Below are positions 49,752 to 64,000 of a stretch of DNA of 64,000 bases, one piece after another. The notes below the pieces were generated by a model that saw nothing but the letters and a program-made list of their open reading frames with translations, was not told the DNA's origin and searched no databases. The stretch covers positions 705,445 to 769,444 of the forward strand of contig JAWQFM010000014.1 in assembly GCA_033442325.1 (NCBI GenBank), read 5' to 3'. The translations under genes and the position numbers were made by a program. Positions within the stretch are counted from its first letter, which is position 1. Each line of letters starts with the position of its first letter. This stretch comes from Salpingoeca rosetta. Its lineage: Eukaryota > Protista > Choanoflagellata.

Positions 49752-51054
49752 CACACACACACACGCCACAGCACTCGCGCCGACTTGATGCAGTGACTCG
49801 TGAATCATGCACTCCACCACCACAACAACAACAGCGTTCCACACCACAACAAGCACAACTGCAAGACACTGCACACACACGCACACACACGCCTACACGC
49901 ACCGCACCTTCCTGTCCGCTTCCCAAACTCACGTGATTGGGCGTGTCGAGAAAAGCACACAACAGTGAACAAGAAGGCAACAACAGCAGAGTGGCTGGGC
50001 AGCTGTCGGGGATGAAGCGGCTGCAACGAGAGAACACACGCACAAACACACGCACACACGCGCACACACTGGCAGGCGACTGAGAGACTGAAAGGAGGGA
50101 GGGCTGCTGGATATGGGCGCGAGTTGGGGTGGTGGGTTGGATGTTCGCGCGTTTGCAGTTTTGCAGCTCTTCTTTGTGTTGCTTGCTTGCTTGCTTGTGT
50201 GTTTGTGTGGTGCGATTTTCTGCTGTATTTTCAAGCAATTGCACACACCATACAACTCGCACACAAAGTCGTTTTGAGAATCGTGCGCATTAGTGCCCAC
50301 AAGCGTATCCACCAGCTTTCCTCCCAGCAAAGCCAGCTTGGGCTGCTTGCTGGCGTTTGCGCTGCCGCTTCTCCCACACACAACAACACAAACATACGAC
50401 GACCACCACCACACACCCCTTCTTCCCTCTCCCTCTTCAGCACGTCAGCGCTTCGTTTCAGGGCTGCTGCCGCTGCTGCTGTTCTTGGTGCTGTTCAACC
50501 AAGACAGGCAGAGAGAGCCGCAAGGAGAGAGTGCGCGCACACTCTTTCCCTTTGCTCCCTTGAGCGTGCGTGTGAAGGACACCGTGTGTGCGTGTGTCCT
50601 GCGCTGAAGCTCAAACACAAACGCTGAGACACAAAAGCAACAGAGAGGATACACGCAGTGAAGACGGTACGATGTGCAGCTACGCCACTGCTTATTGTTT
50701 GGATTTGGATCTGTCTTGCTTTGCTTGCGTGTGCACAAGCTGGAGTTTGACGTGAGCGCATGCGAGCACGAGCGCGGAGTTGGGGCGGGGGGCTGGCTTG
50801 TGCGCTGGTGCTTATGTCCACACGCACGTTTTGTTTGTCCAGATGCCTTGCTGGCGTTTGTTCGGACGCTCACATACGCACACGCATGTACACAAACATA
50901 CACCACGCAAACGCCACGCACAATACCCACAACTCACACACACACACACACGCACACACACGCACGCACGCACAACCCCCACAACACACACGCAATCCTA
51001 CACCAACACGCACACGCACACACCAACACACCGCCAACGTGACGCACGATACAG

Positions 51055-54000
51055 ATGATGGGGCTGCAAGGGAGGCCTGAGCCTCCCTCCTCAGCGGCAC
51101 GATGCACAGTGTGGTGGTGGCTGGGTGCCACCCTGCTCACCTCGCTAGTGCTGATGCCAGCAAGCGGTGCACACGGCACCATTGTTATCCAAGGCCCCGC
51201 CGTGCAGACACTGGAGGGCGGCTCCGCATACAGAGACGCTGCCCTGTGCAACCACGACCCCGTGAAGAAACCCTTCTGTGCCTACAAACAAGGCGGCCGA
51301 TCTGATGGCCAGGACATCACCATCACCGGCCTCCCGCTCCAGTGCAGCACAACCACCGGCGCGTGCACCGTCACCGCGCCAACGGCGCAGTGCTTCACAG
51401 ACGCAGACTGCCAAACCACGTCCCTGCTGGTCGATGGTGTTCCAGCCACAAACCCGGACGAGCCAGCCGCCATCGTCTACAACATGGGCCGCTACGTCAT
51501 CACCTTCAAGGTCAACGGTAACAGCGAATCCTGCACGTACGAGAACCCAGGCACCAAGGAGCCCGGGCAGCCCGACTGCACGCGCATCCTCTACGTCCGC
51601 GACAGAACCCCGCCGGTCATCACCCTGATCGGCGACAAGACCGTTGTCCTGCAAGGTGGCGAGGAGTTCTCCGACCCGGGCGCCACCGGCCATGACGTCG
51701 TTGACGGCGCCATGGACTACATTGCCGACCCGCCCTGCCCCGTGGAGCGGGACGGTGACGGCAACATTGTCAAGTTTATCGGCTCCCCCGGCCAAATCTG
51801 CCGCTTTGTCACCACCGCGGACCTTGTCATTGACAACAAGGAAATCAAGAACCAGACCATCTACTACATTGCCCTGGACACCACCCTCAACTACCGCCAG
51901 GTGGAGCGCACCATCGTGCTGGAAGACACCATCCCGCCCGTCATGACCCTGTGCGGGCCGCACGACGTGGTTGGCGACTCCTCGCACGAGGCCGGCCAGG
52001 AGTACATCGACGCCTGGTGCACCCCAAAGGACAACCCCTGCCTCATGCCAAAGGACCGCCAGCTCACCATGCAGGAGTGTGAGGCAAAGTCGCAGTGCAT
52101 GTGGATTGCCGGCGCATCGCTGGACGTGGACGGCTTCTGCCACCTCAAGACGAGCCCTTGCTTTGGCATCCGCGACGAGAACGACTGCAACGCAGACTCG
52201 GACTGCACCTGGTGCCCGCGCGGCGTCACCGCGTTTGACATTGTCGACGCCAACCCAACAGACGCCATCAAGGTCAACAACCCGGTTGACTCGCAGTCCC
52301 TCGGCATCTACACCATCACCTACACGCTCGCTGACGAGAACGGCAACGTGGCCACCCCGGTCACCCGCCGCGTGCGCGTGCGCGACACCACCGCGCCCGC
52401 CATCACCCTCCTCGGAGACAGCGAGGTGGAGGTGGAGGGCGCCACCTTCTACTTTGAGCGCTTCGCCACGGCCTCCGACTCCTTTGAAGGCGACATCACA
52501 AACCGCATCCTGCTCAAGGTGGACCGCCTGGGCAACCTCGACTGCACAAAGTCGCGCGGCTGCGGCGACCCCAACTTTGTGGACCCGTACGCCCCTGCCG
52601 GCACATCCTTCCTCCTCACATACTCCGTGGCAGACTCAAGCGGCAACTCAGACTCCATGACCAGCCGCGCCACGCGCGAGGTGACCATCATCGACACCAC
52701 CGCGCCCGTACTGCAGCTGCTGGGGCCAAACCCGCTCAACGTCGAAGGCGCCACCGTCTACACGGAGCCGGGGGCCACAGCCACGGACACGCTGGATGAC
52801 GACGACACGCTCTCGCAGTCGATCATCATTGGCGGCGACCGCGTCGACACCAACGCCCCGGCCTTCTCCTCCTTCAACATCTCCTACGATGTCAACGACG
52901 CAGCCGGCAACCCCGCGCGCTCGCTCTTCCGCGAGGTGGTGGTGGTCGACTCCACCCCGCCCGAAATCTCGCTCGTGGGCGACGCCAGCATCGTTGTGGA
53001 CGCCGCACGCGACTACACGGACAAGAACGTCACCGCGGAGGACTCGCTGGACGGGCCCTACCAGTTTCTGCCGCGCTTCGCCAGCCGCATCCGCAAAGTG
53101 GTGCGCAGGCTGGACGTCAGCTGCAGCGACACGGAGTACGAGACGGCGCCACAGTCGGCTCTTGTCGCTCGCTCCTGCGCCCCGCTCACCACGTGCACCG
53201 CCGGCCAGTTTGAGAGCCTTGCGCCCACGCCAACCTCCAACCGCCAGTGCCAGGGCACGCGCGCGCCGTGTGCACTTGGCCAGGACTACGAGATTCGCGC
53301 GCCCACGCCCACGTCCGACCGCGTGTGCGAGGACTGCAGCGGGGCTCGCCAGCAGCTGGCGCCACGCTCCCTCTACTCCATCATCAACCGCACAGACTGC
53401 TTTGACGTGAACCCGCCCAACCTCGTTGTCAACGTGACATGGCCTTCCATGCCCGAACAAGACGACCAACAGTCATCAGCCGCCAGCAACGACAACAGCG
53501 ACAACGGCACCACCACAACCACCATGAGCCCCAACACCACGCCACCGTTTGCCCACACCAAGGAGGTCAATGGCGTCGTGGTCACCACCATCTTCGTCAA
53601 CGATACAGTTGCTTGGTACTTTGACCCGTATCTGGTGGACATTGTTGCGCTGAACGGCTACTTCAACTCCAGCACGGTGTTCAACCGCTCAGACTACCTG
53701 CCACCAACACTGCCGCCACCGACCACGGCCGCCATGCAAAACCTCACCTCCACCTCCACCTCCACCACCACTGCTGCGACGACGACCACGAGCACCACAG
53801 CCGATGCCAACGCCACGACCACTGCCGCACCCGTGATCACCCCGCCGCCTCGCAACATCACCATCGAGCGCTTCGCCGTCGTGTTCACGGAGGCCGGCGA
53901 GTATGAGTACACGTCCACGCTCAACAGCTCCCTGCGCGGCGTTGTGCGGGTGATTGACCTGCCTGTCTTTGACAGCTGCGACCTGGAGGCCAGCCCGCTG

Positions 54001-57000
54001 TTCAACCCGAACGACACGGCCCGCGTCGTGCCGCTCAGGCAGGAGATTGCCGAGCTGGAGGCCTACGCGCACCTGTTTGCAGACGTGTCCCTTCCCTCCA
54101 TTGACGAGGACTACACGGGCCTGTGCCAGCGCATGAGCACCGTGTTCCTGCGCGACGTGCTGTTTGACTACGCCTTCCCGCCCGGCAGCGGCGCGCGTGC
54201 AGGGCAGCTGCAGCAGCTGCCGGCCAGCCTGCTGATTGAGGCCATTGACGAAGACCTGGGCAGGCTGGAGGCGCGCGCCGACGCAAACGCCGCCTGGCGC
54301 CGCGTTGTTGCCCCGCAGGTGCTCGCCGTGGGCGAGAACTCGCTCGTGCGCTTCATCCCATCGCCAAACCTGTACGGCCGCGCCACGTTCTCCTGGCGCA
54401 TGGTGGACGGCAGCCGCGAGGCCGACGACTTTCTCGGCACGGGCCAGGTGCAGATCCTGCCCGTCAACGACTCGCCCACCATCACGGGCAGCGCGGCCGT
54501 CAACTTTGTTGACGAAGACACGCCCGTGGACGACATCAACCCAACGCGTGTCGAGGACCTCATGGCCTCGGCCATGGACAACGACCGCATCACGGACGCA
54601 AACGTCACTATTGGTGCCGCCGTTGTGGCCGTCGACAACCGATTTGGCACCTGGCAGTTTGCCTGCCCGCCGCCAAACGTCAACGGCGGCAACAACAACC
54701 TGCAGTTCCAGGCGTTCCGTGGCGGTGTTGCGCCGGACACGACCGTGCACACGCTGCCTGCGCCCACGGTGGCCACGCTGCTCGGCCCAGAGTGCTTTTT
54801 GCGCTTTGTGCCGGAGACCAACTTCAACACGGAGTTTGACCTGACGGGCGAGCCGCGCCCGGCCTCGGACACGCCCACCATCCAGGTGCGCGCGTGGGAT
54901 CAGACGGGCGAGCGCATGTCCCAGCTACACGAGGGCGTGGACACCACGCAGGGCCCCGGCACACGCGGCAGCCCCTTCAGCGCCAACATCGCCACCGCAG
55001 GCGTCACCGTGTACCGCACAGATGACCCGCCCAACATCATCATCGCCCCTGGCGGCGCAGAGTACACGGCCACGTTTGCGCCGGGCTCCCTCACCCCCGT
55101 GGGCTTTGTGGACGACGACGCCCTTGCGCTGGAGACGCCCGATGGCCCGCTGCTGTCCGAAATTCGCATCCGCATCAGCAACGTGCAGGACGGCGGCGCC
55201 GAGGAGCTGCTGTACGAGACGACTGACACGGGCCTGGAGGTGACAGTTGAGCGCCCGCCCAACACCATCCTCGCCTTTATCCGCCTGGCCAACCGCGCGG
55301 AGTCGCGGCGTGACCAGCGCTTCTTCTTTGCCGTGCTCAGCTCCATGCGCTACATCCACCGCAACGTCAACGCCACCCGTGGCGAGCGCGTCGTCTCCGT
55401 GCAGGGCGTGCTTGGCCGCGTGCCGGGTGAGCCCGCCTTTGCCACCATCTCTGTCAACGCCGCCAACAACCCGCCCCTGCTAGACCTCAACCCGGCCCTG
55501 CGCGGCCACGACACCTTTGTTGTGTACGCATCCGACGGCACGCCGTCCACGCTCGCCCCTGCTGCGTCGCTCATTGACGAGGACAGCGACCCCATCACCG
55601 AGGTCACCATCACCATTGAGGGCGGCTTCCTCCCGCGCGAGGAGCTCCTGCTGCCCACAAACATGACCGGCGGGTACGTCGTCACCACCAGCGAAGAGGA
55701 CGGCAGCATCACCATCCGCCCAGCCCCGGGCGTGGACGCGGGCGCGCTTGATGCAGACAAGCTGGGAAGCCTGCTGCGCCAACTCGAGTACGTGTACCCG
55801 GCGCCACTGCCGCCGCCGCCGCCCGCCACCACGACGATGCCCGCTGCCAACGCCACCACAACCGTGCCCAACAACGCAACCGTGACCAGCACCGTTGCGG
55901 CGAACATGACGACGACATCAACCACCACCACGACCACAACAACAACAACGACCACAACCACAACCACAACCACGCCCATGCCCATGCTCATGACCACGCG
56001 GCGCGTTGTGCTCACCGTGTCGGACGGGCGCGACAGCACGTCCTCGCGCGTGCACATCTCGCCCAGCATGGCCGAGTCCCCGCCCTACCTCGACCTGAAC
56101 GGCGAGCGGCCGGGCGTGGACACCGCCGTCACCTATTCCGAGAGCCAGGGCCTGCTTGCCCTGGCAGACTCTCCATTTGTGCTTGTGCCCGGCGGCCAGC
56201 CGCTCGCGGAGGTGCGCGTGCGCATCGCCTCGAGCCCAGACTGCCTCAACGAGCGCCTGGTGCTGCCGGACGAGATTGCAAATTCGCACTCGTTCAACTT
56301 TGCCAACTTTGACGTGTCCACGGGCAAGCTCGTGTTCCGCGGCAGTGCCACAACGGGCACGTGGGCAAACGCCATCTCCTCGGTTGCCTTCGTCTCGGAC
56401 GCAGCCACCCTCTCTGGCACGTCGCGCACCGTCGTGTTTGAGATTGTGACGGATACGGGCGTGGTGTCCAACCCGGCGCGGGTGATCATCTCGCTCACGG
56501 CGTCCAACGACGCGCCCGTGCTCAACCCCTTTGGCGGCCCGCTCTCGCTGTCCGTGACGCAGGACGTCTCCGACTGGGACAACGCTGGCTGGCCCGTGCG
56601 TTCGCTGATTGACGAGGCGCAGCCGCTGTCGTACCGCTCGCGCGCCGAGCTGCTGTCCTGCGGCACCGCCGGATGCACGCACGCCGCGGCGCAGGGCCAG
56701 TGTGCCGCCAAGGGCCTGCAGCTGTGCACGCACGCACAGGTGTGGCAGGCGTGGCCCAACTTCCCCCACCCGAACGCAGACGGCACCGGTGGCAACGAGG
56801 GCGGCGACGACGTGGTCGCCTGGCTCTCCACGCCGCAGAACGGCACGCAGAACCTCCCCTCCCTCTCTGCGCGCAGCATGCAAGTGGGCAACGTGCTGCT
56901 GGAGGATGCCTCAGCGCTGGACTCTGAGCACGCGCAGGTGCTGCACCTGTACCCGAACGCCGACGAGCCCCGCTTTGCCTTTGCCCTCAAGCGCGACAGC

Positions 57001-60000
57001 CGGCTCGGCCTCCCCCTGTGGGCGGCCTGCTGCGAGCTGCCAGAGAGCGAAGCGCCGGGCACCGCCGGCCTTGAGGCCGTGGCCGTGTTCCGCACGGCGG
57101 GCGTGACGGGCCGCGTCACCTTCCGTCAGCGCGCCCCGGGCGCCACCACGCACGTGCACTTCAACCTGCGCGGCGTCGGGCGGCAGCTGCGCGAGTACAG
57201 CATCTACGCCGGCCAGACGGCCGCGCCCACCTCTGCGGACCGCTGCGACACGGTCGGCTCCATCTTTGACCCGCTCAACCTGGGCCGGTGCGAGCAAGGG
57301 GAGGACGACGCGGCATCCTGTGCCATTGGCGACCTGTCCCGCCGCGTGGGCCAGTTTGCTTCGGACCAGTCGTACTTTGACCGCTACGTCACGGACGCCA
57401 ACTTGCCGCTCTTTGGCGACAACAGCATCATCGGGCGCTCGTTTGCCGTGCTGCGCAACGGCCGCCCCAGCGTGTGCGTGCCCATTGTGGTGAGTCGGCC
57501 GTCGCGCCAGACATATGCCACGGTTGAGATGGACGACGAGGTGCGCGGGTCCGTGGCCATGCAGCAGTTTGCCTCGCAGGACGGCACCCTCACCCAGACG
57601 CTGGTGACCACCAACCTGCGCCTGGTCAACCCGCCCTCGCTCGCGCCGCAGATTGTGGACTGGAGCCTGGTGTCCAGTGCGGACGGCACGTGCGCGGCCG
57701 CCACGCCGCTGTTTGATGTTCCGCTCCGCGTGCGCCAGCCCATGTTCACCTCCACCGCCCAGGTGTGGGCGCCCACCACCAGCGCGTGGGTGCAGCCGCT
57801 CGAGGCGCAGGCAAACCAGGGCAACGCCTCCCTCCCCGTGGCGTGGTCCACACTCGCCCTCGACCTTGAGCAAGACTCGCTGTGCCTGGATGCCATGGCC
57901 CAGCTCAACCCGCTCGTGCTGGCAGGCAGCGACGGCGACGCGGGGAGCGCCATGCCACGCCTGTGCGTGTACGTGGACGCGGACGCCAGCGCTTCAGCGT
58001 CAACGAGCGCTGGCACGTGCGATGCCGTGTGGGGCCAAGCAGGAGCGCGCCTGCGTGCTGCGTGGTGCCAGCCACCGACGTGCACGGCGGATGGGTGGTG
58101 CAGTGTGCGGGACGCATGCGTGTCGGCGTCGACTGCGTTTGGCATTGCCACACCGGGTGCTGGTACGTCCGGGAGCGCAGCTGAGGAGGCCAGCGACGCA
58201 GCCAAGGTGGCGGCGTTTATGTCTGCCGCCGTTGCTCTGCACCCGGGCACCGCCGCCGCCACAACGGCACACGAGCGCACCAGCCTGTACACGGCGCGCC
58301 GCACCATTGCCAACACCAGCACGCTGTGTGCTGGGTTCGTGCCTGGGGCGGAAGCGTGCCCCGCCAACGCGGATGCGTGCGAGGCCGGCGACTGGACGGC
58401 CCGCTACGGGCGCCTCACCCTGCAGCCCATCAACACGCGCTTCATGTCCGCGCGCAACCTGCCGTTGCTGTCGAGCAACGACGTGTCCTCTGTGCTGCCG
58501 CCCCCCGCCTTTGCCTCCACAACGCCGTCCAAGGCCTCGCTGCGCGTGCAGCGGCCAGACGGCACGTACTCGTGCGCGCCCGTGAAGGAGCAGGTGAAGC
58601 CGCGCGAGGTGATTGCCCGCGTCGACATCAACGGCATTCAGGGCTTTGTCACCTTCTATCAGGCGTCCCCAGACGCGGCCACGCAGGTGAAGGTGGAGCT
58701 GCGCGGCACGGGCCTGGCCCAGGACAACAGCCTCATCGGCGCAAAGATGACCATCACCAGCAACGCCGTGAACCTGCAGGGCCTGTCCATGTCGGAGGTG
58801 TGCAGCGATCTCGGCGATTTGTTCCACCCGGACAACACCACCCTCACTGGCACGTGCAGCGCAGGCAACCTGGCCTCCTGCAGCGTGGGCGACCTGGCTG
58901 GGAAGCATGGCGCGTTGCCCAACCAGCCGCCCTACGAACAATACTTTGAGGACAACGACCTGCCCCTGTTTGGCAAGCGCAGTATTGTGGGTCGCTCCAT
59001 TCGCCTGATGCAAGGCTCCACGCTGCTTGCGTGTGCGCCCATCCTGTACGTGGACCCCGTGCGCGTTGCACGTGCCACGCTGCACTCGCCCGTGCACGGG
59101 TACGTGACGGCGTTTCAGCTGCGCGACGAGGCCGACAAGACGCTGGGTGATGCCAGCGGCACCCACGCTGCAGAGACCATCTTCATCGTGGACGTGGCGC
59201 GCTCCGATGTCAACGCGACGCAGGGCGCCCTGGACGTCGACTGGGCCGTGCGCGAGTACGACAACGCGTGCACGTGCCAGCGGCTTGGCCCCGCCCTTGC
59301 GCTGACCACGACCGGTGAGGCCGTGGGCGACCTGTCTTCGGAGGTGGGCGGCGTGCGCATCCCAGGCAGCGGCCAGGCCAGCGCCCGCCAGGTGTTTGCC
59401 TCCACGCGCCTGTCGCTGTCCATGCTCTTGAACCAGTCGGTGTACTTCTCCAACGACGCGTGCGCGGTGTTCCGCGAGGTGCTGCCTGTTGAGCTGGTGG
59501 CCTCGTTTGACCGCGAAGATGTGCACGGCCACGTCACGCTGCGCCAGGACCACATGCTGGCGCTGACGCAGGTGACGGTGACGCTGGCTGGGCTGGAGGA
59601 CCGCGGCAACGGCATTCGCGTGGAGGACCGGCGCCTGCTGCAGACACTTGACGACGAGGGCACCCCGCAGCTCGACTGCAACAGCGGCTCCACCATCTTT
59701 GATCCCCTGAAAATTGGCCGCCTGTGCGACAACCGCCTGTTTGCCTCCTCATCAGACGTGTGCGCGCCCGGTGACCTGAGCGGCCGGCACGGCGGCGTGG
59801 ACCGCCTGCCATCTGCCCGCAACGTCTTTGACGACTACTACCTGAACCTGTACGGCCCCAGCTCGCTGGCGTCGCGCGGGCTGGTCATCACGGGCTCCAC
59901 TGTGCTGCAGCAGCTGCGCAACCGCCCCTGGATCTGCGCCAACCTCGACGCAACGGAGCCCGCCGCCGCAACGCAGGCCGCTGCCGTCTTCTCCCCGGCG

Positions 60001-63000
60001 CAGCCAGAGCAGGCGCGCCTGCACGCCGCACACCAGCGGCCCGGCGACGTCGCGGACGGCATTGACGGGCAGGGCGACGGCCGCGGCATTCTGTCTGGCT
60101 GGCTGCACTTTTCCAAGCCCACGACCGCCGCCACCGCCGTAGACGACGACGACAGCGCCAGCCCGCCCACGCTCGTGTCCTCGTACCTGCAGCTGAGCGG
60201 CAGCGCGTGGAGCGTGGTTGACTGGTACGTGAGTGCCTCGGAGACGTGCGACGATGCCATTGCCGCGGCTGGCGGCAGCACGCGCGAGGACGTGTTCAAC
60301 CCGCACGGCGTGGCAACCACAAACACCTCTGGGTACGATGACGACTGCGGCACAGGCCGCAACCAGCTGCGGTGCGCAGCGGGCGACCTTGCCAACAAGC
60401 TTGGCACGGACGGCCTCGCTGCGTCGTCCTCACCATCCTTTGGTCGCGCTGACGTGAGCACGCAGCTGACGGGCGCGGCCACCATCATCGGGCGGCCGCT
60501 TGTGGTTGTGGCGCAGCACGGGACGACCCAGCAGAAGGAGGCGCTGTGCACCGTGGTGCGGTCGTACGGCGGCCCCAAGGTGAGCGACATTGACACGCCC
60601 CGCGAGCGGCTGGGCATTGCCGTTGTGGCGACGACCAGCGACCACGGCACGTGGCAGCTCTACCGCAACGAGGCGCAGGGGTGGGTGGATCTGCCGGAGG
60701 TGGCCTTCACCAACGCCCTGCACCTGCGTGCGTCGGACACGAACCGGCTGCGCTTCCGCCCCGAGACGCACTTTAGCGGCGACGAGGCGTGCGGCGTGTG
60801 CCCGACGCCGCGCCGCAAGAGCTGCGTGCCCTGCGCGCTCAACAGGACGGTGGGCAGCCTGACCTTCTACGGGTGGGACGGCAGCAACGTGGTGGCGGAC
60901 GGGGTGCGCTTCTCGCTCGCGCTGGCCGGTTCGTCGAGCTCCTACAGCAACCAGTCCAGCACGGTGCTGGTGCAGGTGCAGGACGCCAAGGTGAACGAGA
61001 CGGCGCCGCACGGCACGTCCTACGAGGTGCTGTTTGATGTGCAGGACAACGTGGGCAACCAGGCTGAGACGGTGACGCGCATGATCCGCGTGGAGGACAG
61101 CACGGACCCCGTCATCACGCTTCGCGGCGACGCCATGCTGAAGCACGAGGCTGCCACGCCATATGTTGACGACGGCGCGACGGCCTTTGATGCCCACGAC
61201 CTTTGGGTGAGCAACAACGTGTTTGTGGAAGGCATTGACGGTGACGTGCCGGCGTACCCGACGCCGCCCGCGGCCATCTCCGTGCTGTCATGCGACCGGG
61301 AGAACGACCCCCGCCTGGCCCTGCCCACGTACCAGGACGAGTACGGCCCGCTGTACACGTGCTCGCTGCCGCAGGACATGGCGCAGGAGCCGTTCTTCTG
61401 CGTGGAGCGCAGCGAGCCTGCGGCCACCGACCCGCTTCTCCAGCGCAACGGCGGCGGCATTCGCCTGCAGGGCAGTGGCCGCGTCAACGGCTACACCATG
61501 CCGTGCACGCTGACGGGCAGCCGCCTCACGTGCTTCTCCAGCGACACGGCCGCCCAGAACCTGCAGTACCCAGGCACGGCCACGGAGCGGCACCTGGCCT
61601 GCGCTGCGCGCGTGCGCACGCCGCTGTGCCAGTACCACGACTACATCCTTGCCACGCGCCACCGCTATCCCGTGAGCGGGGAGGTGGACGTGTACGCGCC
61701 GGACGGCAGCACGTTCACGCTCAACTACACGGTGGCGGATGCTGCAGGCAACTCGCACCTGGTGCAGCGGCAGGTGGAGATTGAGGACACGCGGCCGCCC
61801 GTGCTGCGCCCCTTCAACCAGGGCAACACGCTCGAGTTTGTCCGAGAGAACGGCGTGGCGGCGGAGCCGTACAACCCGCACGACTTTGCGTGCGCGTCGA
61901 CCATCGCCAGCCGCTTCACGGAGGCCAACGCCAGCATGATCCACTGCGTGTCTGCGCTTGACACGCTGGAGGGGGACCTGAGCTGCGACGTGACGACGTC
62001 CGTGTACGTGTTTGGCCCCGGCAGCGGCATGCAGGAGCAGCTGACACGCTTCCGCCGCGCAGCAGAGGTGCACAGCAGCGAGGAGCTGTTTGTGCAGGTG
62101 AGCGCGTCCTGCGTCAACTGGAACTCGTTTATCGAGCTGCCCTTCAACACGTCATCGACGCCGACCGACCCCATCTGCTTTGATGCGATGGGCACGCTGG
62201 ACCTGGTCAACGCAACAGCGCCGCTCAACACATCGTACCTCATCACGTACACGGTGCAGGACCACTCGCGCCAGCAGCACCGCGTGAGCACGCAGCGGCT
62301 GCTGACGCTGGTGGACGAGCGGCCGCCGCAGGTGCGCATCCTGAGCGACCCCGTGCTGTTTGTGGACTACCTGACCAACTTCACGGACGCCATGGCCAAG
62401 CAAGGGCTGGCCGTGTTTGACGAGCACGATGGCGAGATCACCACGGCCATCCAGGTGGAGTCTAATGTGAACACGGCCGTGCCGGGCAACTACACCGTCT
62501 CGTACACAGCACAGGACCTGTCTGGCAACCGCGGCGTGACGGCGACGCGCATTGTGGTGGTGCGGCCGCCGGCGGAGGTGCAGCTCATGCGCAACCAGAG
62601 CACCGTCTCGTACGGCCTCACGCTCCGGTACATGCGCCCCTCCGTGTTCAACACGTTTGACGGCCACACCACGTTCCGCTGGGCGCTGTGGTACTCTGTG
62701 CGCAACTTCAGCGACGCCTTCTCCGACCTGCGGCGCAGCGACATTGTGCGCCTGGACGCGCGCGGTGTTTCCACGCCCGCTCCCCGCGCCCGCCGCGACG
62801 TGACGGCAGAGCCCGAGAACACGGCCGTGTCGTTCTCGCTGGCCACCCCGTGCGACCGCGCGGAGGAGCTGGCGCAGGTGCTTGGCCTCGTGGTGCGACA
62901 GGGGGTGCTGCTGTCCAACCTCAGCGTGGCGGCGCCGCTCACGTACGACAACGTGTTCCCGAGCGTGACGGGCCAGCCTGCGCTGGGCCTGGGCATGTGC

Positions 63001-64000
63001 CCCGTGGTGACAACAACCACCACGACGACGACAACCACGACGACGACCACGGACAACTCGACGACGGTGGACCCGACGCTCAACAGCTCGTCGGGCGGCT
63101 CCAACGACGCGGTCATCATCGTGGCTATTGTCATCCCCGTGCTGCTGCTCATCATCGCGCTGGTTGTGTTTGTGTACCGCGCGACAAAGCCGAAGAACCG
63201 CCTGGACGCGCTGCTGCAGTACCAGGAGGCGCACGAGCTGTCCCACTACGGTGGCGTGCCTGGCGGCCCCGCCGGCGACAAGGGCCAGACGATGGTGCGT
63301 GTCGGCAAGTACAACGTGGAGGTTGACACCAGCCCGCAGCTGCAGAACGAGGACGTGTATGCGTTCCACACGCCCAAGAACATGACGCCCGGGCAGGCCA
63401 AGGCACAGGCGACGGCGAAGAAGGCGCCGCCGCCGCCGCCAGAGGACATTTACGAGGACGTGGACCACAAGAAGTCCACGCTGCGGCGGCCAGGGGATGC
63501 GCTGCAGCCCAGCACTGTGTTTATCGAGAGCGCGCCGGAGACGTACGAGGCGTTTGACTCGAGCAACCCGGCATTCTCCAGCGACGCTTCGCTGCGGCCC
63601 ACAGGCTTCCAGCACACGGATGACGACATCTACGATGGCGTGGACGGCGGCAACATGGGCTTCAGCTCGCACGACAAGTCGTCCAGGACGGGCGACCTGG
63701 CCAAGGTCACGGAGGAACTGTACGAGGTGCAAGGAAAGGGGGCGACGCTGCGCAAGAAGCCGCCTGCCCCACCGACGGTACCGACTCCCGTGGCACCAGC
63801 GCCCCTGGCACCGACAAGTTTCCAGCCCACGGAGGACGATATCTACGATGGCGTGGATGTTGCTGCTCCAGCTGGCTTCAGCTCGCATGACAAGTCTTCT
63901 CGCACGGGTGATTTGGCCAAGGTGACGGAAGAGCTGTATGAGGTGCAGGGCAAAGCGTCCACACTTCGCAAGAAGCCACCGGCACCTGCGCCAGTACCCG
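51055..64000 (+). CDS. Giant single-pass (type I) cell-surface receptor/adhesion protein, >4315 aa, intronless in this window, 3' end beyond the window
   Basis: Frame +1 open from ATG 51055 to the window end (translated by eye; absent from the ORF track because there is no stop). Signal peptide (VWWWLGATLLTSLVLMPASGA); ~9 DUF5011/HYR-like Ig repeats (D[TS]xPPVITLxG...Y.V.D.AGN...R.V.V); TNFR-like Cys repeats (PTPTSDRVC); a cupredoxin-like domain; bacterial cadherin-like repeats (VNDSP, NNPPLLDLN, SNDAPVL); a Link-like module; six SOD-fold repeats; a SEA-like domain with RARR; a Thr stalk; TM 63109-63177 (AVIIVAIVIPVLLLIIALVVFVY); a Tyr/Pro-rich tail. Strong GC3 codon bias and no dinucleotide microsatellites. 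Confidence 0.93.
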   Translation, partial: MMGLQGRPEPPSSAARCTVWWWLGATLLTSLVLMPASGAHGTIVIQGPAVQTLEGGSAYRDAALCNHDPVKKPFCAYKQGGRSDGQDITITGLPLQCSTTTGACTVTAPTAQCFTDADCQTTSLLVDGVPATNPDEPAAIVYNMGRYVITFKVNGNSESCTYENPGTKEPGQPDCTRILYVRDRTPPVITLIGDKTVVLQGGEEFSDPGATGHDVVDGAMDYIADPPCPVERDGDGNIVKFIGSPGQICRFVTTADLVIDNKEIKNQTIYYIALDTTLNYRQVERTIVLEDTIPPVMTLCGPHDVVGDSSHEAGQEYIDAWCTPKDNPCLMPKDRQLTMQECEAKSQCMWIAGASLDVDGFCHLKTSPCFGIRDENDCNADSDCTWCPRGVTAFDIVDANPTDAIKVNNPVDSQSLGIYTITYTLADENGNVATPVTRRVRVRDTTAPAITLLGDSEVEVEGATFYFERFATASDSFEGDITNRILLKVDRLGNLDCTKSRGCGDPNFVDPYAPAGTSFLLTYSVADSSGNSDSMTSRATREVTIIDTTAPVLQLLGPNPLNVEGATVYTEPGATATDTLDDDDTLSQSIIIGGDRVDTNAPAFSSFNISYDVNDAAGNPARSLFREVVVVDSTPPEISLVGDASIVVDAARDYTDKNVTAEDSLDGPYQFLPRFASRIRKVVRRLDVSCSDTEYETAPQSALVARSCAPLTTCTAGQFESLAPTPTSNRQCQGTRAPCALGQDYEIRAPTPTSDRVCEDCSGARQQLAPRSLYSIINRTDCFDVNPPNLVVNVTWPSMPEQDDQQSSAASNDNSDNGTTTTTMSPNTTPPFAHTKEVNGVVVTTIFVNDTVAWYFDPYLVDIVALNGYFNSSTVFNRSDYLPPTLPPPTTAAMQNLTSTSTSTTTAATTTTSTTADANATTTAAPVITPPPRNITIERFAVVFTEAGEYEYTSTLNSSLRGVVRVIDLPVFDSCDLEASPLFNPNDTARVVPLRQEIAELEAYAHLFADVSLPSIDEDYTGLCQRMSTVFLRDVLFDYAFPPGSGARAGQLQQLPASLLIEAIDEDLGRLEARADANAAWRRVVAPQVLAVGENSLVRFIPSPNLYGRATFSWRMVDGSREADDFLGTGQVQILPVNDSPTITGSAAVNFVDEDTPVDDINPTRVEDLMASAMDNDRITDANVTIGAAVVAVDNRFGTWQFACPPPNVNGGNNNLQFQAFRGGVAPDTTVHTLPAPTVATLLGPECFLRFVPETNFNTEFDLTGEPRPASDTPTIQVRAWDQTGERMSQLHEGVDTTQGPGTRGSPFSANIATAGVTVYRTDDPPNIIIAPGGAEYTATFAPGSLTPVGFVDDDALALETPDGPLLSEIRIRISNVQDGGAEELLYETTDTGLEVTVERPPNTILAFIRLANRAESRRDQRFFFAVLSSMRYIHRNVNATRGERVVSVQGVLGRVPGEPAFATISVNAANNPPLLDLNPALRGHDTFVVYASDGTPSTLAPAASLIDEDSDPITEVTITIEGGFLPREELLLPTNMTGGYVVTTSEEDGSITIRPAPGVDAGALDADKLGSLLRQLEYVYPAPLPPPPPATTTMPAANATTTVPNNATVTSTVAANMTTTSTTTTTTTTTTTTTTTTTTPMPMLMTTRRVVLTVSDGRDSTSSRVHISPSMAESPPYLDLNGERPGVDTAVTYSESQGLLALADSPFVLVPGGQPLAEVRVRIASSPDCLNERLVLPDEIANSHSFNFANFDVSTGKLVFRGSATTGTWANAISSVAFVSDAATLSGTSRTVVFEIVTDTGVVSNPARVIISLTASNDAPVLNPFGGPLSLSVTQDVSDWDNAGWPVRSLIDEAQPLSYRSRAELLSCGTAGCTHAAAQGQCAAKGLQLCTHAQVWQAWPNFPHPNADGTGGNEGGDDVVAWLSTPQNGTQNLPSLSARSMQVGNVLLEDASALDSEHAQVLHLYPNADEPRFAFALKRDSRLGLPLWAACCELPESEAPGTAGLEAVAVFRTAGVTGRVTFRQRAPGATTHVHFNLRGVGRQLREYSIYAGQTAAPTSADRCDTVGSIFDPLNLGRCEQGEDDAASCAIGDLSRRVGQFASDQSYFDRYVTDANLPLFGDNSIIGRSFAVLRNGRPSVCVPIVVSRPSRQTYATVEMDDEVRGSVAMQQFASQDGTLTQTLVTTNLRLVNPPSLAPQIVDWSLVSSADGTCAAATPLFDVPLRVRQPMFTSTAQVWAPTTSAWVQPLEAQANQGNASLPVAWSTLALDLEQDSLCLDAMAQLNPLVLAGSDGDAGSAMPRLCVYVDADASASASTSAGTCDAVWGQAGARLRAAWCQPPTCTADGWCSVRDACVSASTAFGIATPGAGTSGSAAEEASDAAKVAAFMSAAVALHPGTAAATTAHERTSLYTARRTIANTSTLCAGFVPGAEACPANADACEAGDWTARYGRLTLQPINTRFMSARNLPLLSSNDVSSVLPPPAFASTTPSKASLRVQRPDGTYSCAPVKEQVKPREVIARVDINGIQGFVTFYQASPDAATQVKVELRGTGLAQDNSLIGAKMTITSNAVNLQGLSMSEVCSDLGDLFHPDNTTLTGTCSAGNLASCSVGDLAGKHGALPNQPPYEQYFEDNDLPLFGKRSIVGRSIRLMQGSTLLACAPILYVDPVRVARATLHSPVHGYVTAFQLRDEADKTLGDASGTHAAETIFIVDVARSDVNATQGALDVDWAVREYDNACTCQRLGPALALTTTGEAVGDLSSEVGGVRIPGSGQASARQVFASTRLSLSMLLNQSVYFSNDACAVFREVLPVELVASFDREDVHGHVTLRQDHMLALTQVTVTLAGLEDRGNGIRVEDRRLLQTLDDEGTPQLDCNSGSTIFDPLKIGRLCDNRLFASSSDVCAPGDLSGRHGGVDRLPSARNVFDDYYLNLYGPSSLASRGLVITGSTVLQQLRNRPWICANLDATEPAAATQAAAVFSPAQPEQARLHAAHQRPGDVADGIDGQGDGRGILSGWLHFSKPTTAATAVDDDDSASPPTLVSSYLQLSGSAWSVVDWYVSASETCDDAIAAAGGSTREDVFNPHGVATTNTSGYDDDCGTGRNQLRCAAGDLANKLGTDGLAASSSPSFGRADVSTQLTGAATIIGRPLVVVAQHGTTQQKEALCTVVRSYGGPKVSDIDTPRERLGIAVVATTSDHGTWQLYRNEAQGWVDLPEVAFTNALHLRASDTNRLRFRPETHFSGDEACGVCPTPRRKSCVPCALNRTVGSLTFYGWDGSNVVADGVRFSLALAGSSSSYSNQSSTVLVQVQDAKVNETAPHGTSYEVLFDVQDNVGNQAETVTRMIRVEDSTDPVITLRGDAMLKHEAATPYVDDGATAFDAHDLWVSNNVFVEGIDGDVPAYPTPPAAISVLSCDRENDPRLALPTYQDEYGPLYTCSLPQDMAQEPFFCVERSEPAATDPLLQRNGGGIRLQGSGRVNGYTMPCTLTGSRLTCFSSDTAAQNLQYPGTATERHLACAARVRTPLCQYHDYILATRHRYPVSGEVDVYAPDGSTFTLNYTVADAAGNSHLVQRQVEIEDTRPPVLRPFNQGNTLEFVRENGVAAEPYNPHDFACASTIASRFTEANASMIHCVSALDTLEGDLSCDVTTSVYVFGPGSGMQEQLTRFRRAAEVHSSEELFVQVSASCVNWNSFIELPFNTSSTPTDPICFDAMGTLDLVNATAPLNTSYLITYTVQDHSRQQHRVSTQRLLTLVDERPPQVRILSDPVLFVDYLTNFTDAMAKQGLAVFDEHDGEITTAIQVESNVNTAVPGNYTVSYTAQDLSGNRGVTATRIVVVRPPAEVQLMRNQSTVSYGLTLRYMRPSVFNTFDGHTTFRWALWYSVRNFSDAFSDLRRSDIVRLDARGVSTPAPRARRDVTAEPENTAVSFSLATPCDRAEELAQVLGLVVRQGVLLSNLSVAAPLTYDNVFPSVTGQPALGLGMCPVVTTTTTTTTTTTTTTDNSTTVDPTLNSSSGGSNDAVIIVAIVIPVLLLIIALVVFVYRATKPKNRLDALLQYQEAHELSHYGGVPGGPAGDKGQTMVRVGKYNVEVDTSPQLQNEDVYAFHTPKNMTPGQAKAQATAKKAPPPPPEDIYEDVDHKKSTLRRPGDALQPSTVFIESAPETYEAFDSSNPAFSSDASLRPTGFQHTDDDIYDGVDGGNMGFSSHDKSSRTGDLAKVTEELYEVQGKGATLRKKPPAPPTVPTPVAPAPLAPTSFQPTEDDIYDGVDVAAPAGFSSHDKSSRTGDLAKVTEELYEVQGKASTLRKKPPAPAPVP
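57073..60561 (+). repeat. Six tandem Cu/Zn-SOD-fold (CSRP-type) protein repeats within the giant ORF
   Basis: Repeats at ~57073-57489, 57508-58590, 58606-59049, 59062-59478, 59491-59949, 59974-60561 share G.V.F.Q...T.V, C...F[DN]P, C..GDL..[KR]HG and LPLFG..SI[IV]GRS..C..I. Confidence 0.82.
63601..64000 (+). repeat. Cytoplasmic tandem ~71-72-aa repeat (DDIYDGV...FSSHDKSSRTGDLAKVTEELYEVQGK..TLRKKPPAP), at least 2 copies
   Basis: IYDG at 63628 and 63841; the Tyr of ELYEV at 63721 and 63937. Confidence 0.95.

What the first reader, a model, noticed from the sequence alone, without database searches (positions are those of the whole stretch)
52948..61095. Russian-doll receptor ectodomain: domains inserted inside domains to at least three levels
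Seen in sequence. Level 1: the DUF5011-like repeat starting DSTPPEISLVG...TAEDSLDG...RIRKVVRRL (52948-53118) stops halfway. Its missing half, VNETAPHGTSYEVLFDVQDNVGNQAETVTRMIRVE, appears only at 60991-61095; the intact neighbour reads VDTNAPAFSSFNISYDVNDAAGNPARSLFREVVVV. The insert is ~7870 nt (~2620 aa). Level 2: inside it, a bacterial-type cadherin-like repeat starts NDAPVL...VTQD...NAGWPVRSLIDEA (56506-56619) and resumes at 60580 as VSDIDT..LGIAVVATTSDHGTWQ...RLRFRPETHFSG..LTFYGWDG..YS. This matches the uninterrupted copy at ~54463-55014 (VNDSPT..EDT..VEDLM..DND..GAAVVAVDNRFGTWQF..LRFVPETNF..IQVRAWDQ..PFS). That insert is ~1320 aa. Level 3: SOD-like repeat 2 is split by ~200 aa (57724-~58332) between its LFDVP and CEAGDW motifs. 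Other DUF5011 repeats carry smaller Cys-rich loop inserts (e.g. ~61240-61680). Inference: the protein would fold as a branched, looped-out structure rather than a string of beads, and grew by repeated in-loop insertion. I know of no described receptor nested on this scale.
Basis: partly seen in the sequence, partly recalled or inferred. Interest (0 to 1): 0.92.

Follow-up and report, generated by a model that had tools for sequence, protein, structure and literature searches.

The report
Nested split domains in giant receptor
A giant membrane receptor gene of the choanoflagellate Salpingoeca rosetta has three small domains, one inside another, each cut in two by a far larger stretch of other domains, an arrangement two related species also keep; it is an extreme case of a known way of building proteins, not a new principle.

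Summary
One stop-free frame (51043-63999, 4319 codons, Met at 51055) encodes a type I membrane protein and runs off the window.

- Level 1: Ig-like repeat 5 (PF16403) is split into 52948-53118 and 60991-61095 by 2,624 aa. The halves hit complementary parts of the Pfam profile, and the joined halves align end to end with the neighbouring repeat (E 3e-12).
- Level 2: a bacterial-type cadherin-like unit is split into 56506-56619 and 60580-60984 by 1,320 aa. A profile from an unrelated bacterial protein runs straight across the join. Of 4,276 windows tried as N piece, the claimed one scores best.
- Level 3: SOD-like repeat 2 carries a ~210-aa Cys-rich insert. Support is moderate because the N part is weak.

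Barroeca monosierra and Salpingoeca infusionum keep all four level 1-2 pieces at identical lengths. Stranded RNA reads cover 55500-61400 with no splice joints at the inserts.

That the halves refold in three dimensions is inferred, not shown: the structure jobs gave no answer.

Nesting depth has precedents (integrin beta; six levels in cyanobacterial RNA polymerase). What is unusual is the size of the inserts relative to their hosts.

The parts
51055..63999 (+). Coding sequence of the giant type I membrane protein. It is intronless over the part seen and runs off the window end; the sequence beyond is withheld.
   Evidence: Stop-free frame 51043-63999. ATG at 51055 followed by a hydrophobic signal-like stretch. 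Downstream reads N. Full-length orthologues of 4041 and 4247 aa.
51175..52947 (+). Ig-like repeats R0-R4 (PF16403 type). R2 and R3 carry small Cys-rich inserts; R4 (52693-52947) is uninterrupted.
   Evidence: PF16403 at 113 bits over 3 stretches. R4 alone scores 42.9 bits over profile 1-71. Internal HMM map.
52948..53118 (+). Level 1 host, N half of Ig-like repeat R5 (aa 636-692).
   Evidence: PF16403 profile 1-29. Matches R4 columns 1-36 at E 2.5e-7. Internal HMM positions 1-37. 57 aa in all three species, 49-65% identity.
53119..60990 (+). Level 1 insert, 2,624 aa. It holds TNFR-like Cys-rich modules, mucin-like stretches, cadherin-like units and the whole level 2 nest.
   Evidence: TNFR_c6 at E 6e-6, below Pfam's cut-off. 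Cadherin-like units. Sod_Cu.
54463..55011 (+). Uninterrupted copy of the bacterial-type cadherin-like unit (aa 1141-1323), used as reference for level 2.
   Evidence: Bacterial-unit HMM positions 1-151. AlphaFold2 model with pLDDT 76 and pTM 0.77 as one domain. TM 0.69 to bacterial cadherin-like clusters.
56506..56619 (+). Level 2 host, N piece of the split cadherin-like unit (aa 1822-1859).
   Evidence: Bacterial-unit HMM positions 2-36. Best of 4,276 windows as complement to the C piece. 38 aa in all three species.
56620..60579 (+). Level 2 insert, 1,320 aa: an unidentified Cys-containing module (about 56620-57057) followed by six SOD-like repeats.
   Evidence: Sod_Cu at 33 bits, above the 28.9 cut-off, for repeat 1. 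Internal SOD HMM map. Atlas search of the first module gave weak leads only.
57505..57723 (+). Level 3 host, N part of SOD-like repeat 2 (aa 2155-2227).
   Evidence: Weak alone (E 0.0024 against repeat 4). It lies within the collinear join alignment to repeat 1, E 2.6e-8.
57724..58353 (+). Level 3 insert, about 210 aa, Cys-rich then Ala-rich. It is 203 aa in B. monosierra and 138 aa in S. infusionum.
   Evidence: Seven invariant Cys in the three-species alignment. Lengths. No Pfam family and no Atlas match. Model unusable.
58354..58602 (+). Level 3 host, C part of SOD-like repeat 2 (aa 2438-2520).
   Evidence: Matches SOD-like repeat 3 columns 86-147 at E 1.4e-10. Internal SOD HMM positions 82-128.
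60580..60984 (+). Level 2 host, C piece of the split cadherin-like unit (aa 3180-3314).
   Evidence: Bacterial-unit HMM positions 43-108 and 112-152, 52.6 bits. 135 aa in all three species, 50-66% identity.
60991..61095 (+). Level 1 host, C half of Ig-like repeat R5 (aa 3317-3351).
   Evidence: PF16403 profile 48-71. Matches R4 columns 51-84 at E 1.2e-7. VNETAPHGT is invariant in three species.
61096..62565 (+). Ig-like repeats R6-R8. R6 has an insert of about 146 aa (61246-61683) and R7 one of about 61 aa, at the same loop as R5. R8 is uninterrupted.
   Evidence: PF16403 found as two stretches in R6, 37.6 bits. Internal HMM map. Motif positions.
63109..63177 (+). Predicted transmembrane helix (aa 4023-4045), followed by a basic stop-transfer stretch and a Tyr-rich cytoplasmic tail with a tandem repeat (63178-63999).
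   Evidence: Read from the translation. The S. infusionum orthologue ends in an SH2 domain, 24.5 bits against a cut-off of 21.

Best explanation
One intronless gene encodes a giant type I membrane receptor or adhesin. The trunk of its ectodomain is a row of nine PF16403 Ig-like repeats.

The nest has three levels. In repeat 5, the loop between the fourth strand and the conserved V-D/N-x-x-A-P strand holds 2,624 residues of other modules: TNFR-like, mucin-like and cadherin-like. The last cadherin-like unit of that insert is itself interrupted. Just after its short helix and before its D-x-D loop sit 1,320 residues: an unidentified module plus six SOD-like repeats. SOD-like repeat 2 carries a further Cys-rich insert of about 210 residues, at the place where repeat 1 has a 15-residue link.

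The most likely working is that each host domain is completed by its two distant pieces. Each insert would then be a closed side-loop pinned at both ends to one small beta-sandwich, and the ectodomain would be branched rather than linear. The architecture probably grew by successive in-frame insertions at permissive loops before these three species diverged.

Shown: the sequence-level nesting, its conservation, and continuous transcription of 55500-61400. Inferred: refolding of the halves in cis, the branched shape, and the order of insertion events. Function is inferred only from the parts: extracellular binding coupled to phosphotyrosine signalling.
For: - Single frame of 4319 codons.
- The level 1 halves match complementary Pfam ranges, 1-29 and 48-71.
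- The level 1 join matches R4 end to end at E 3.3e-12.
- R5N is the only N half without a local C half, and R5C has no local N half.
- The level 2 join gives one alignment across the junction with an independent bacterial HMM, and the claimed N piece ranks first of 4,276 windows.
- The uninterrupted copy models as a single domain. The part equivalent to the N piece has pLDDT 78-89, and the split point falls in the loop after helix 36-43. The fold matches bacterial cadherin-like clusters at TM 0.69.
- The level 3 join matches repeat 1 at E 2.6e-8, and the C part matches repeat 3 at E 1.4e-10.
- The host pieces are 57, 38, 135 and 35 aa in all three species. Their identity is 47-66%, against 36-50% for the inserts.
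- One orthologue is a complete assembled transcript.
- Stranded RNA reads cover all 30 bins of 55500-61400, with no skipping joints at any insert boundary.
- Graded inserts of 0, 18, 61, 146 and 2,624 aa sit at the same loop of the Ig-like repeats.
Against: - There is no structural evidence that the halves pair. The two-chain prediction gave no verdict, and the model of the split SOD repeat had pLDDT 34.
- Each level 1 half alone is below Pfam's cut-off: 15.1 and 14.0 bits against 27.
- The level 2 N piece is weak in the orthologues (E 0.002 and 0.005) and ranks only third in S. infusionum.
- The level 3 N part is weak, and the level 3 insert may be a long loop rather than a domain.
- RNA depth is low (about 1-25x), and the level 1 N junction at 53118 was not covered by reads.
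- A survey of insertions finds inserts usually smaller than their hosts and with close termini (PMC13114784). Closing a host around 2,624 aa is therefore far outside the usual range.
Confidence: 0.7

Rival explanations
1. The half-domains are relics. Insertions destroyed repeat 5, the cadherin-like unit and SOD-like repeat 2, and the leftover pieces now serve only as linkers or pack onto neighbouring domains. The ectodomain would be a linear string of modules.
For: No structural support for pairing was obtained. Each half alone is below Pfam's cut-off. Inserts this large are far outside the usual size relation of insert to host (PMC13114784).
Against: The pieces keep exactly the same lengths in three species and are more conserved than the inserts. 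Core motifs such as VNETAPHGT are invariant. Both halves of every host are retained in all three species. R6 has a 146-aa insert at the same loop and still scores above Pfam's cut-off as two stretches.
Confidence: 0.13
2. The halves pair in trans. The N half of one molecule completes the C half of another, so the split domains act as domain-swap joints that make receptor dimers or chains.
For: It is compatible with all the sequence evidence for complementary, conserved halves. A very long insert lowers the local-concentration advantage of pairing in cis.
Against: There is no direct evidence. The C piece of level 2 ends two residues before the C half of level 1, and the last SOD-like repeat ends a few residues before the level 2 C piece. 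This looks like compact closure in cis. The complex job gave no verdict either way.
Confidence: 0.12
3. It is an artefact: mis-assembly, or retained introns that happen to be open in frame. The real mRNA would lack the inserts.
For: The level 1 N junction was not covered by the single reads call. RNA depth is low.
Against: The same order of pieces occurs in a genome-derived model from B. monosierra and in a complete transcript from S. infusionum. The inserts encode recognisable domains in the same frame. Raw stranded RNA reads cover 55500-61400 without skipping joints, and contigs from independent runs match with no differences.
Confidence: 0.03

Closest known systems
Nested domain insertions as catalogued from ECOD/AlphaFold (A1-B1-C-B2-A2), with six-level nesting in the SI3 region of cyanobacterial RNA polymerase beta' (PMC13114784)
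   Same: Hosts are interrupted in sequence by inserts that are themselves hosts. Insertions sit in loops.
   Different: In that survey the median insert is 115 aa and the median host 199 aa. The insert is smaller than the host in 77% of events, and the whole SI3 region is 630-690 aa. Here hosts of 92 and 173 aa carry multi-domain inserts of 2,624 and 1,320 aa, in an extracellular receptor. The fold here is only inferred.
Integrin beta subunit head: beta-I domain inserted in the hybrid domain (PMC9856412, PMC12383024), with the hybrid domain inserted in the PSI domain (my own knowledge, not checked here)
   Same: A cell-surface receptor ectodomain nested to a similar depth, with two chain connections between each host and its insert.
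   Different: Each integrin insert is a single domain, and the whole nest is about 430 aa. There is no sequence relation, and the host folds differ.
Choanoflagellate transmembrane proteins with an extracellular DUF5011 domain, cytosolic Tyr motifs and C-terminal SH2-like domains, proposed as CRK SH2 partners (PMC5043372)
   Same: Type I membrane protein with a PF16403/DUF5011 ectodomain and a Tyr-rich tail. The S. infusionum orthologue has an SH2 domain.
   Different: That paper describes no split or nested domains. The Tyr motifs here read YDGV, YEVQ and YEDV rather than YxxP. I did not test whether any of those proteins is this gene.
Bacterial giant adhesins with tandem cadherin-like units beginning NDAP (Cadherin_4/Cadherin_5/Big_9 class), for example hit P0003
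   Same: The level 2 host and its uninterrupted sister match the roughly 150-aa bacterial unit over its whole length.
   Different: The bacterial units are contiguous and arranged in tandem. Here one unit is split by 1,320 aa. The Pfam Cadherin_5 match is below the cut-off (E 0.026).

Membership tests
PF16403 Bact_surface_Ig-like (DUF5011), for split repeat R5 | Match to the Pfam profile above the gathering score (27 bits) | tested here: inconclusive
   The N half scores 15.1 bits (profile 1-29) and the C half 14.0 bits (profile 48-71). Each is below the cut-off alone, and their plain sum is 29.1 bits. The joined sequence was not submitted to Pfam. Neighbouring R4 scores 42.9 bits.
PF16403 Bact_surface_Ig-like (DUF5011), for split repeat R5 | Full-length collinear similarity to undisputed members of the same tandem array | tested here: met
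   Join against R4: E 3.3e-12, columns 1-84 of 85. Join against R8: E 3.8e-6. Register in the array: R4 ends at 52947, R5N starts at 52948, R5C ends at 61095 and R6 starts at 61096.
Bacterial cadherin-like unit (Cadherin_4/5 class), for the level 2 host | Match over the whole unit, from the NDAP start to the final strand | tested here: met
   HMM from 11 units of P0003: the join covers positions 2-108 and 112-152, 68.8 bits. Sliding-window control.
Bacterial cadherin-like unit (Cadherin_4/5 class), for the level 2 host | Pfam family assignment above the cut-off | tested here: not met
   Cadherin_5 at E 0.026, 14.8 bits against a cut-off of 26.5, for the uninterrupted copy. No hit for the split pieces.
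Bacterial cadherin-like unit (Cadherin_4/5 class), for the level 2 host | Single beta-sandwich fold that includes the N-terminal piece | tested here: met
   Tested for the uninterrupted sister copy only: pLDDT 76, pTM 0.77, TM 0.69 over 155-159 residues to bacterial cadherin-like clusters. The split copy itself was not folded.
Cu/Zn superoxide dismutase fold (PF00080), for the SOD-like repeats | Pfam match above the cut-off (28.9 bits) | tested here: met
   Repeat 1 scores 33 bits. Repeat 3 scores 17 bits, below the cut-off. Repeat 2 has no Pfam hit and is tied to the family only through repeats 1 and 3.
Cu/Zn superoxide dismutase fold (PF00080), for the SOD-like repeats | Copper and zinc ligands and catalytic activity | not tested
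   Ligand columns were not examined systematically here. An earlier first-stage note calls the repeats copper-dead; I did not check this.
Nested domain insertion (A1-B1-C-B2-A2) | The two sequence segments flanking an insert belong to one domain family and cover complementary parts of it | tested here: met
   Levels 1 and 2 strongly. Level 3 moderately.
Nested domain insertion (A1-B1-C-B2-A2) | The two segments form one compact domain in three dimensions | tested here: inconclusive
   The complex job gave no verdict. The level 3 model had pLDDT 34. Joined sequences could not be submitted to the folding tools.

The most novel reading that the evidence does not exclude
The split host domains may be working clasps rather than passive scaffolds. 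Each small beta-sandwich holds a side-loop of 1,300-2,600 residues closed at both ends. Force or ligand binding on the loop could therefore peel the two halves apart, or let them re-pair with another molecule. That would give a mechanosensitive or polymerising receptor whose state is passed to the phosphotyrosine/SH2 tail.
Probability: 0.1. Interest if true: 0.85.

Novelty: new variant of a known kind. Interest (0 to 1): 0.58.

Why it matters
Domain insertion is common, but surveys find inserts that are compact, usually smaller than the host, and with close termini. Here a 92-residue Ig-like domain and a 173-residue cadherin-like domain appear to be closed around multi-domain inserts 8 to 28 times their own size. 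The arrangement is nested three deep and kept through choanoflagellate divergence down to 38% identity.

If the hosts really refold, this sets a new outer limit for how much sequence a small beta-sandwich can tolerate in a loop. It would also show that receptor ectodomains in the closest relatives of animals can be branched rather than linear. The species has working genome editing (PMC7314544), so a function can be tested.

It also warns annotators: domain callers working on contiguous sequence will miss or mislabel such hosts.

Tried and rejected
- **Two-chain complex prediction** of the level 1 halves (59 + 38 aa) scored 0.13 against a mark of 0.34. That is no verdict, neither for nor against.
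- **AlphaFold2 of SOD-like repeat 2 with its insert** (376 aa, 3 sequences) gave pLDDT 33.6 and is unusable.
- **Foldseek of the cadherin-like model against the PDB** found nothing at E <= 0.001; the weak top rows were cadherin EC domains.
- **Sequence search of R4 against PDB chains** found no match.
- **Pfam on ten further pieces of the inserts** found no families.
- **Atlas feature search** gave only weak leads for the module at 56620-57057 and nothing for the level 3 insert.
- **Reading the 3' end of the gene** was not possible; the sequence beyond the window is withheld as N. The 5134-aa open frame reported for the genome may run through those N.
- **Search for an orthologue without the inserts.** I searched all 1.84 billion representatives with aa 5-692. 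Only the two full-length orthologues matched collinearly, plus two short fragments (P0119, P0131) that stop before the split. The rest were repeat matches.
- **Alternation of two SOD-like subtypes.** I considered this and dropped it. The high scores of repeats 1, 3 and 5 arise because they trained the model, and repeat 2 is closer to repeats 1 and 3 than to 4 and 6.

Full report
**The gene**

Frame 1 of the + strand is free of stops from 51043 to the end of the window, a run of 4319 codons. The first ATG is at 51055. It is followed by a hydrophobic signal-like stretch. A 23-residue hydrophobic helix lies at aa 4023-4045, followed by a basic stretch and a Tyr-rich tail. I number residues from the codon at 51043.

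The best relatives here are choanoflagellate proteins, which fits.

**Level 1**

The ectodomain holds nine PF16403 (DUF5011) Ig-like repeats, which I call R0 to R8. R4 ends at 52947, and R5 starts at 52948 with the usual D-x-T-P-P motif. After 57 residues R5 gives way to a TNFR-like Cys-rich module. Its other half, VNETAPHG..., begins at 60991 and ends at 61095, and R6 starts at 61096.

- Alone, the N half matches Pfam profile positions 1-29 (15.1 bits) and the C half positions 48-71 (14.0 bits). The same ranges appear for halves of the orthologues.
- In profile-profile comparison with R4, the N half matches columns 1-36 and the C half columns 51-84. The join matches columns 1-84 in one alignment at E 3.3e-12.
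- I built an HMM from the uninterrupted repeats and tried every 57-aa window of the protein in front of the C half. Only N halves of Ig-like repeats gave full-length matches. R5N scored 58 bits, and the native upstream sequence 28 bits over the C-terminal part only.

R5N is therefore the only N half without a local C half, and R5C the only C half without a local N half.

**The insertion site is a hot spot**

The site lies between the fourth strand and the V-D/N-x-x-A-P motif. Insert sizes there are as follows:

| Repeat | Insert at this loop |
|---|---|
| R4, R8 | none |
| R3 | about 18 aa |
| R7 | about 61 aa |
| R6 | about 146 aa |
| R5 | 2,624 aa |

Pfam still recognises R6 above its cut-off as two stretches.

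**Level 2**

A bacterial protein found in the homologue search (P0003) carries eleven tandem units of about 150 aa, each starting NDAP. An HMM of these units has 153 positions and is independent of the window.

- It matches the uninterrupted copy at aa 1141-1323 over positions 1-151.
- The N piece (aa 1822-1859) matches positions 2-36.
- The C piece (aa 3180-3314) matches positions 43-108 and 112-152.
- The join matches positions 2-108 straight across the junction: 57.8 bits, and 68.8 bits in all.

As a control I tried all 4,276 windows of 44 aa in front of the C piece. The eight best were 1815-1822, at 57.8-61.5 bits, against a median of 42.0 and a 99th percentile of 49.5. Next came the N part of the uninterrupted copy. 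The same test puts the claimed piece first in B. monosierra and third in S. infusionum.

An AlphaFold2 model of the uninterrupted copy is a single domain with pLDDT 76 and pTM 0.77. The part equivalent to the N piece is confident. The split point falls in the loop after helix 36-43 and before the strand at 56-63. The model resembles bacterial cadherin-like clusters of the ESM Atlas at TM 0.69. Pfam's Cadherin_5 match is below its cut-off.

**Level 3**

The level 2 insert holds an unidentified module and six SOD-like repeats. Repeat 1 passes Pfam's Sod_Cu cut-off.

Between repeats 1 and 3, the C part (aa 2438-2520) matches repeat 3 columns 86-147 at E 1.4e-10. The join of aa 2153-2232 and aa 2436-2521 aligns collinearly with repeat 1 at E 2.6e-8. 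The N part alone is weak.

The roughly 210 residues in between carry seven Cys that are invariant in three species. They have no recognisable family. Their length varies from 138 to 213 aa. Whether they form a domain or a long loop is open, because the model was unusable.

**Conservation**

Two full-length orthologues exist. One is from Barroeca monosierra (4041 aa, 48% identity). The other is from Salpingoeca infusionum (4247 aa, 38% identity) and is an assembled transcript marked complete.

Both keep every piece in the same order. The four pieces of levels 1 and 2 are 57, 38, 135 and 35 aa in all three species, with no indels. Their identity is 47-66%, against 36-50% for the inserts. A search of 1.84 billion representative proteins with aa 5-692 found no orthologue lacking the insert.

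**Transcription**

Two raw stranded RNA-seq runs cover all 30 bins of 55500-61400, with the orientation expected for a + strand RNA. The only joints lie in the poly-Thr low-complexity run at 55919-55974. None lies at an insert boundary.

Depth is low, so rare isoforms cannot be excluded.

**What is inferred**

That the halves refold, in cis, into complete sandwiches is an inference from complementarity and conservation. The two-chain prediction of the level 1 halves gave no verdict.

One feature is suggestive. The level 2 C piece ends two residues before the level 1 C half, and the last SOD-like repeat ends a few residues before the level 2 C piece. This is what compact closure of each loop would need.

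The rivals are relic halves, pairing in trans, and artefact. I rate them 0.13, 0.12 and 0.03.

**Comparison with what is known**

A recent survey finds insertions in 20% of multidomain proteins, and up to six nested levels in the SI3 region of cyanobacterial RNA polymerase beta'. Its median insert is 115 aa against a median host of 199 aa, and the insert is smaller than the host in 77% of events (PMC13114784).

Integrin beta has its beta-I domain inserted in the hybrid domain (PMC9856412, PMC12383024). That the hybrid domain is in turn inserted in PSI is my own knowledge, not checked here.

So depth is not new. The size of multi-domain inserts relative to small hosts is far outside the surveyed range.

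Choanoflagellate membrane proteins with DUF5011 ectodomains, Tyr motifs and SH2-like ends have been described (PMC5043372), but not as nested. I found no paper on this protein.

**Verdict**

This is a new variant of a known kind.

Noticed in passing
window 53140-53153 and 60997-61010: A short direct repeat lies near both level 1 junctions: gagacggcgcc, encoding E-T-A-P. It sits 9 aa after the N junction and at the start of the C half, and these are the only two ETAP in the protein. Two random 20-aa windows of this protein share a 4-mer in about 0.7% of trials. The first copy reads EVAP or ESLP in the orthologues, so it may be chance rather than a trace of the insertion event.
   Followed up: partly
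P0002 residues 4152-4213 (orthologue); window 63178-63999: The S. infusionum orthologue ends in an SH2 domain (24.5 bits, cut-off 21). The S. rosetta tail seen in the window has tandem Tyr-containing repeats (DDIYDGVD, EELYEVQGK). Its own end lies beyond the window and is withheld.
   Followed up: partly
window 55798-55992, especially 55919-55974: A mucin-like poly-Thr run interrupts the last loop of a cadherin-like repeat...LEYVY, then the Thr run, then TTRRVVLTVSDG.... RNA and DNA reads pile up here (depth 46,388 in one run) with 'goes back' joints. These are probably reads from many Thr-repeat loci or length variants. Contigs of independent runs break here.
   Followed up: no
window 51055-63999: A coding sequence of 13 kb or more shows no intron in the part covered by reads (55500-61400). 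GC rises from about 0.55 in the rest of the window to 0.64-0.69 across this gene.
   Followed up: no
G000 contigs C3, C9, C12, C13, C15, C20, C21, C26, C30, C33: PF16403-type repeats are a common building block in this genome. There are at least 42 six-frame matches to R4+R5N on eleven contigs counting C14, this gene's own, several of them in open frames over 1000 aa. The level 2 type unit has only one other weak match, C17:99539-99742.
   Followed up: no
window 53545-54000 (aa 835-985): A conserved beta-rich segment (VVVTTIFVNDTVAWYFDP ... GEYEYTSTLNSSLRGVVRVID) is interrupted by a Thr/Ser/Pro-rich stretch. That stretch is much shorter in B. monosierra. It may be one more loop insert, of low-complexity type. 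Pfam gave only mucin-like noise.
   Followed up: no
window about 8000-10000: The window holds 941 N. The 8001-10000 bin shows GC 0.31 and many spurious long open frames on both strands. This is an assembly gap or a masked stretch, unrelated to the finding.
   Followed up: no
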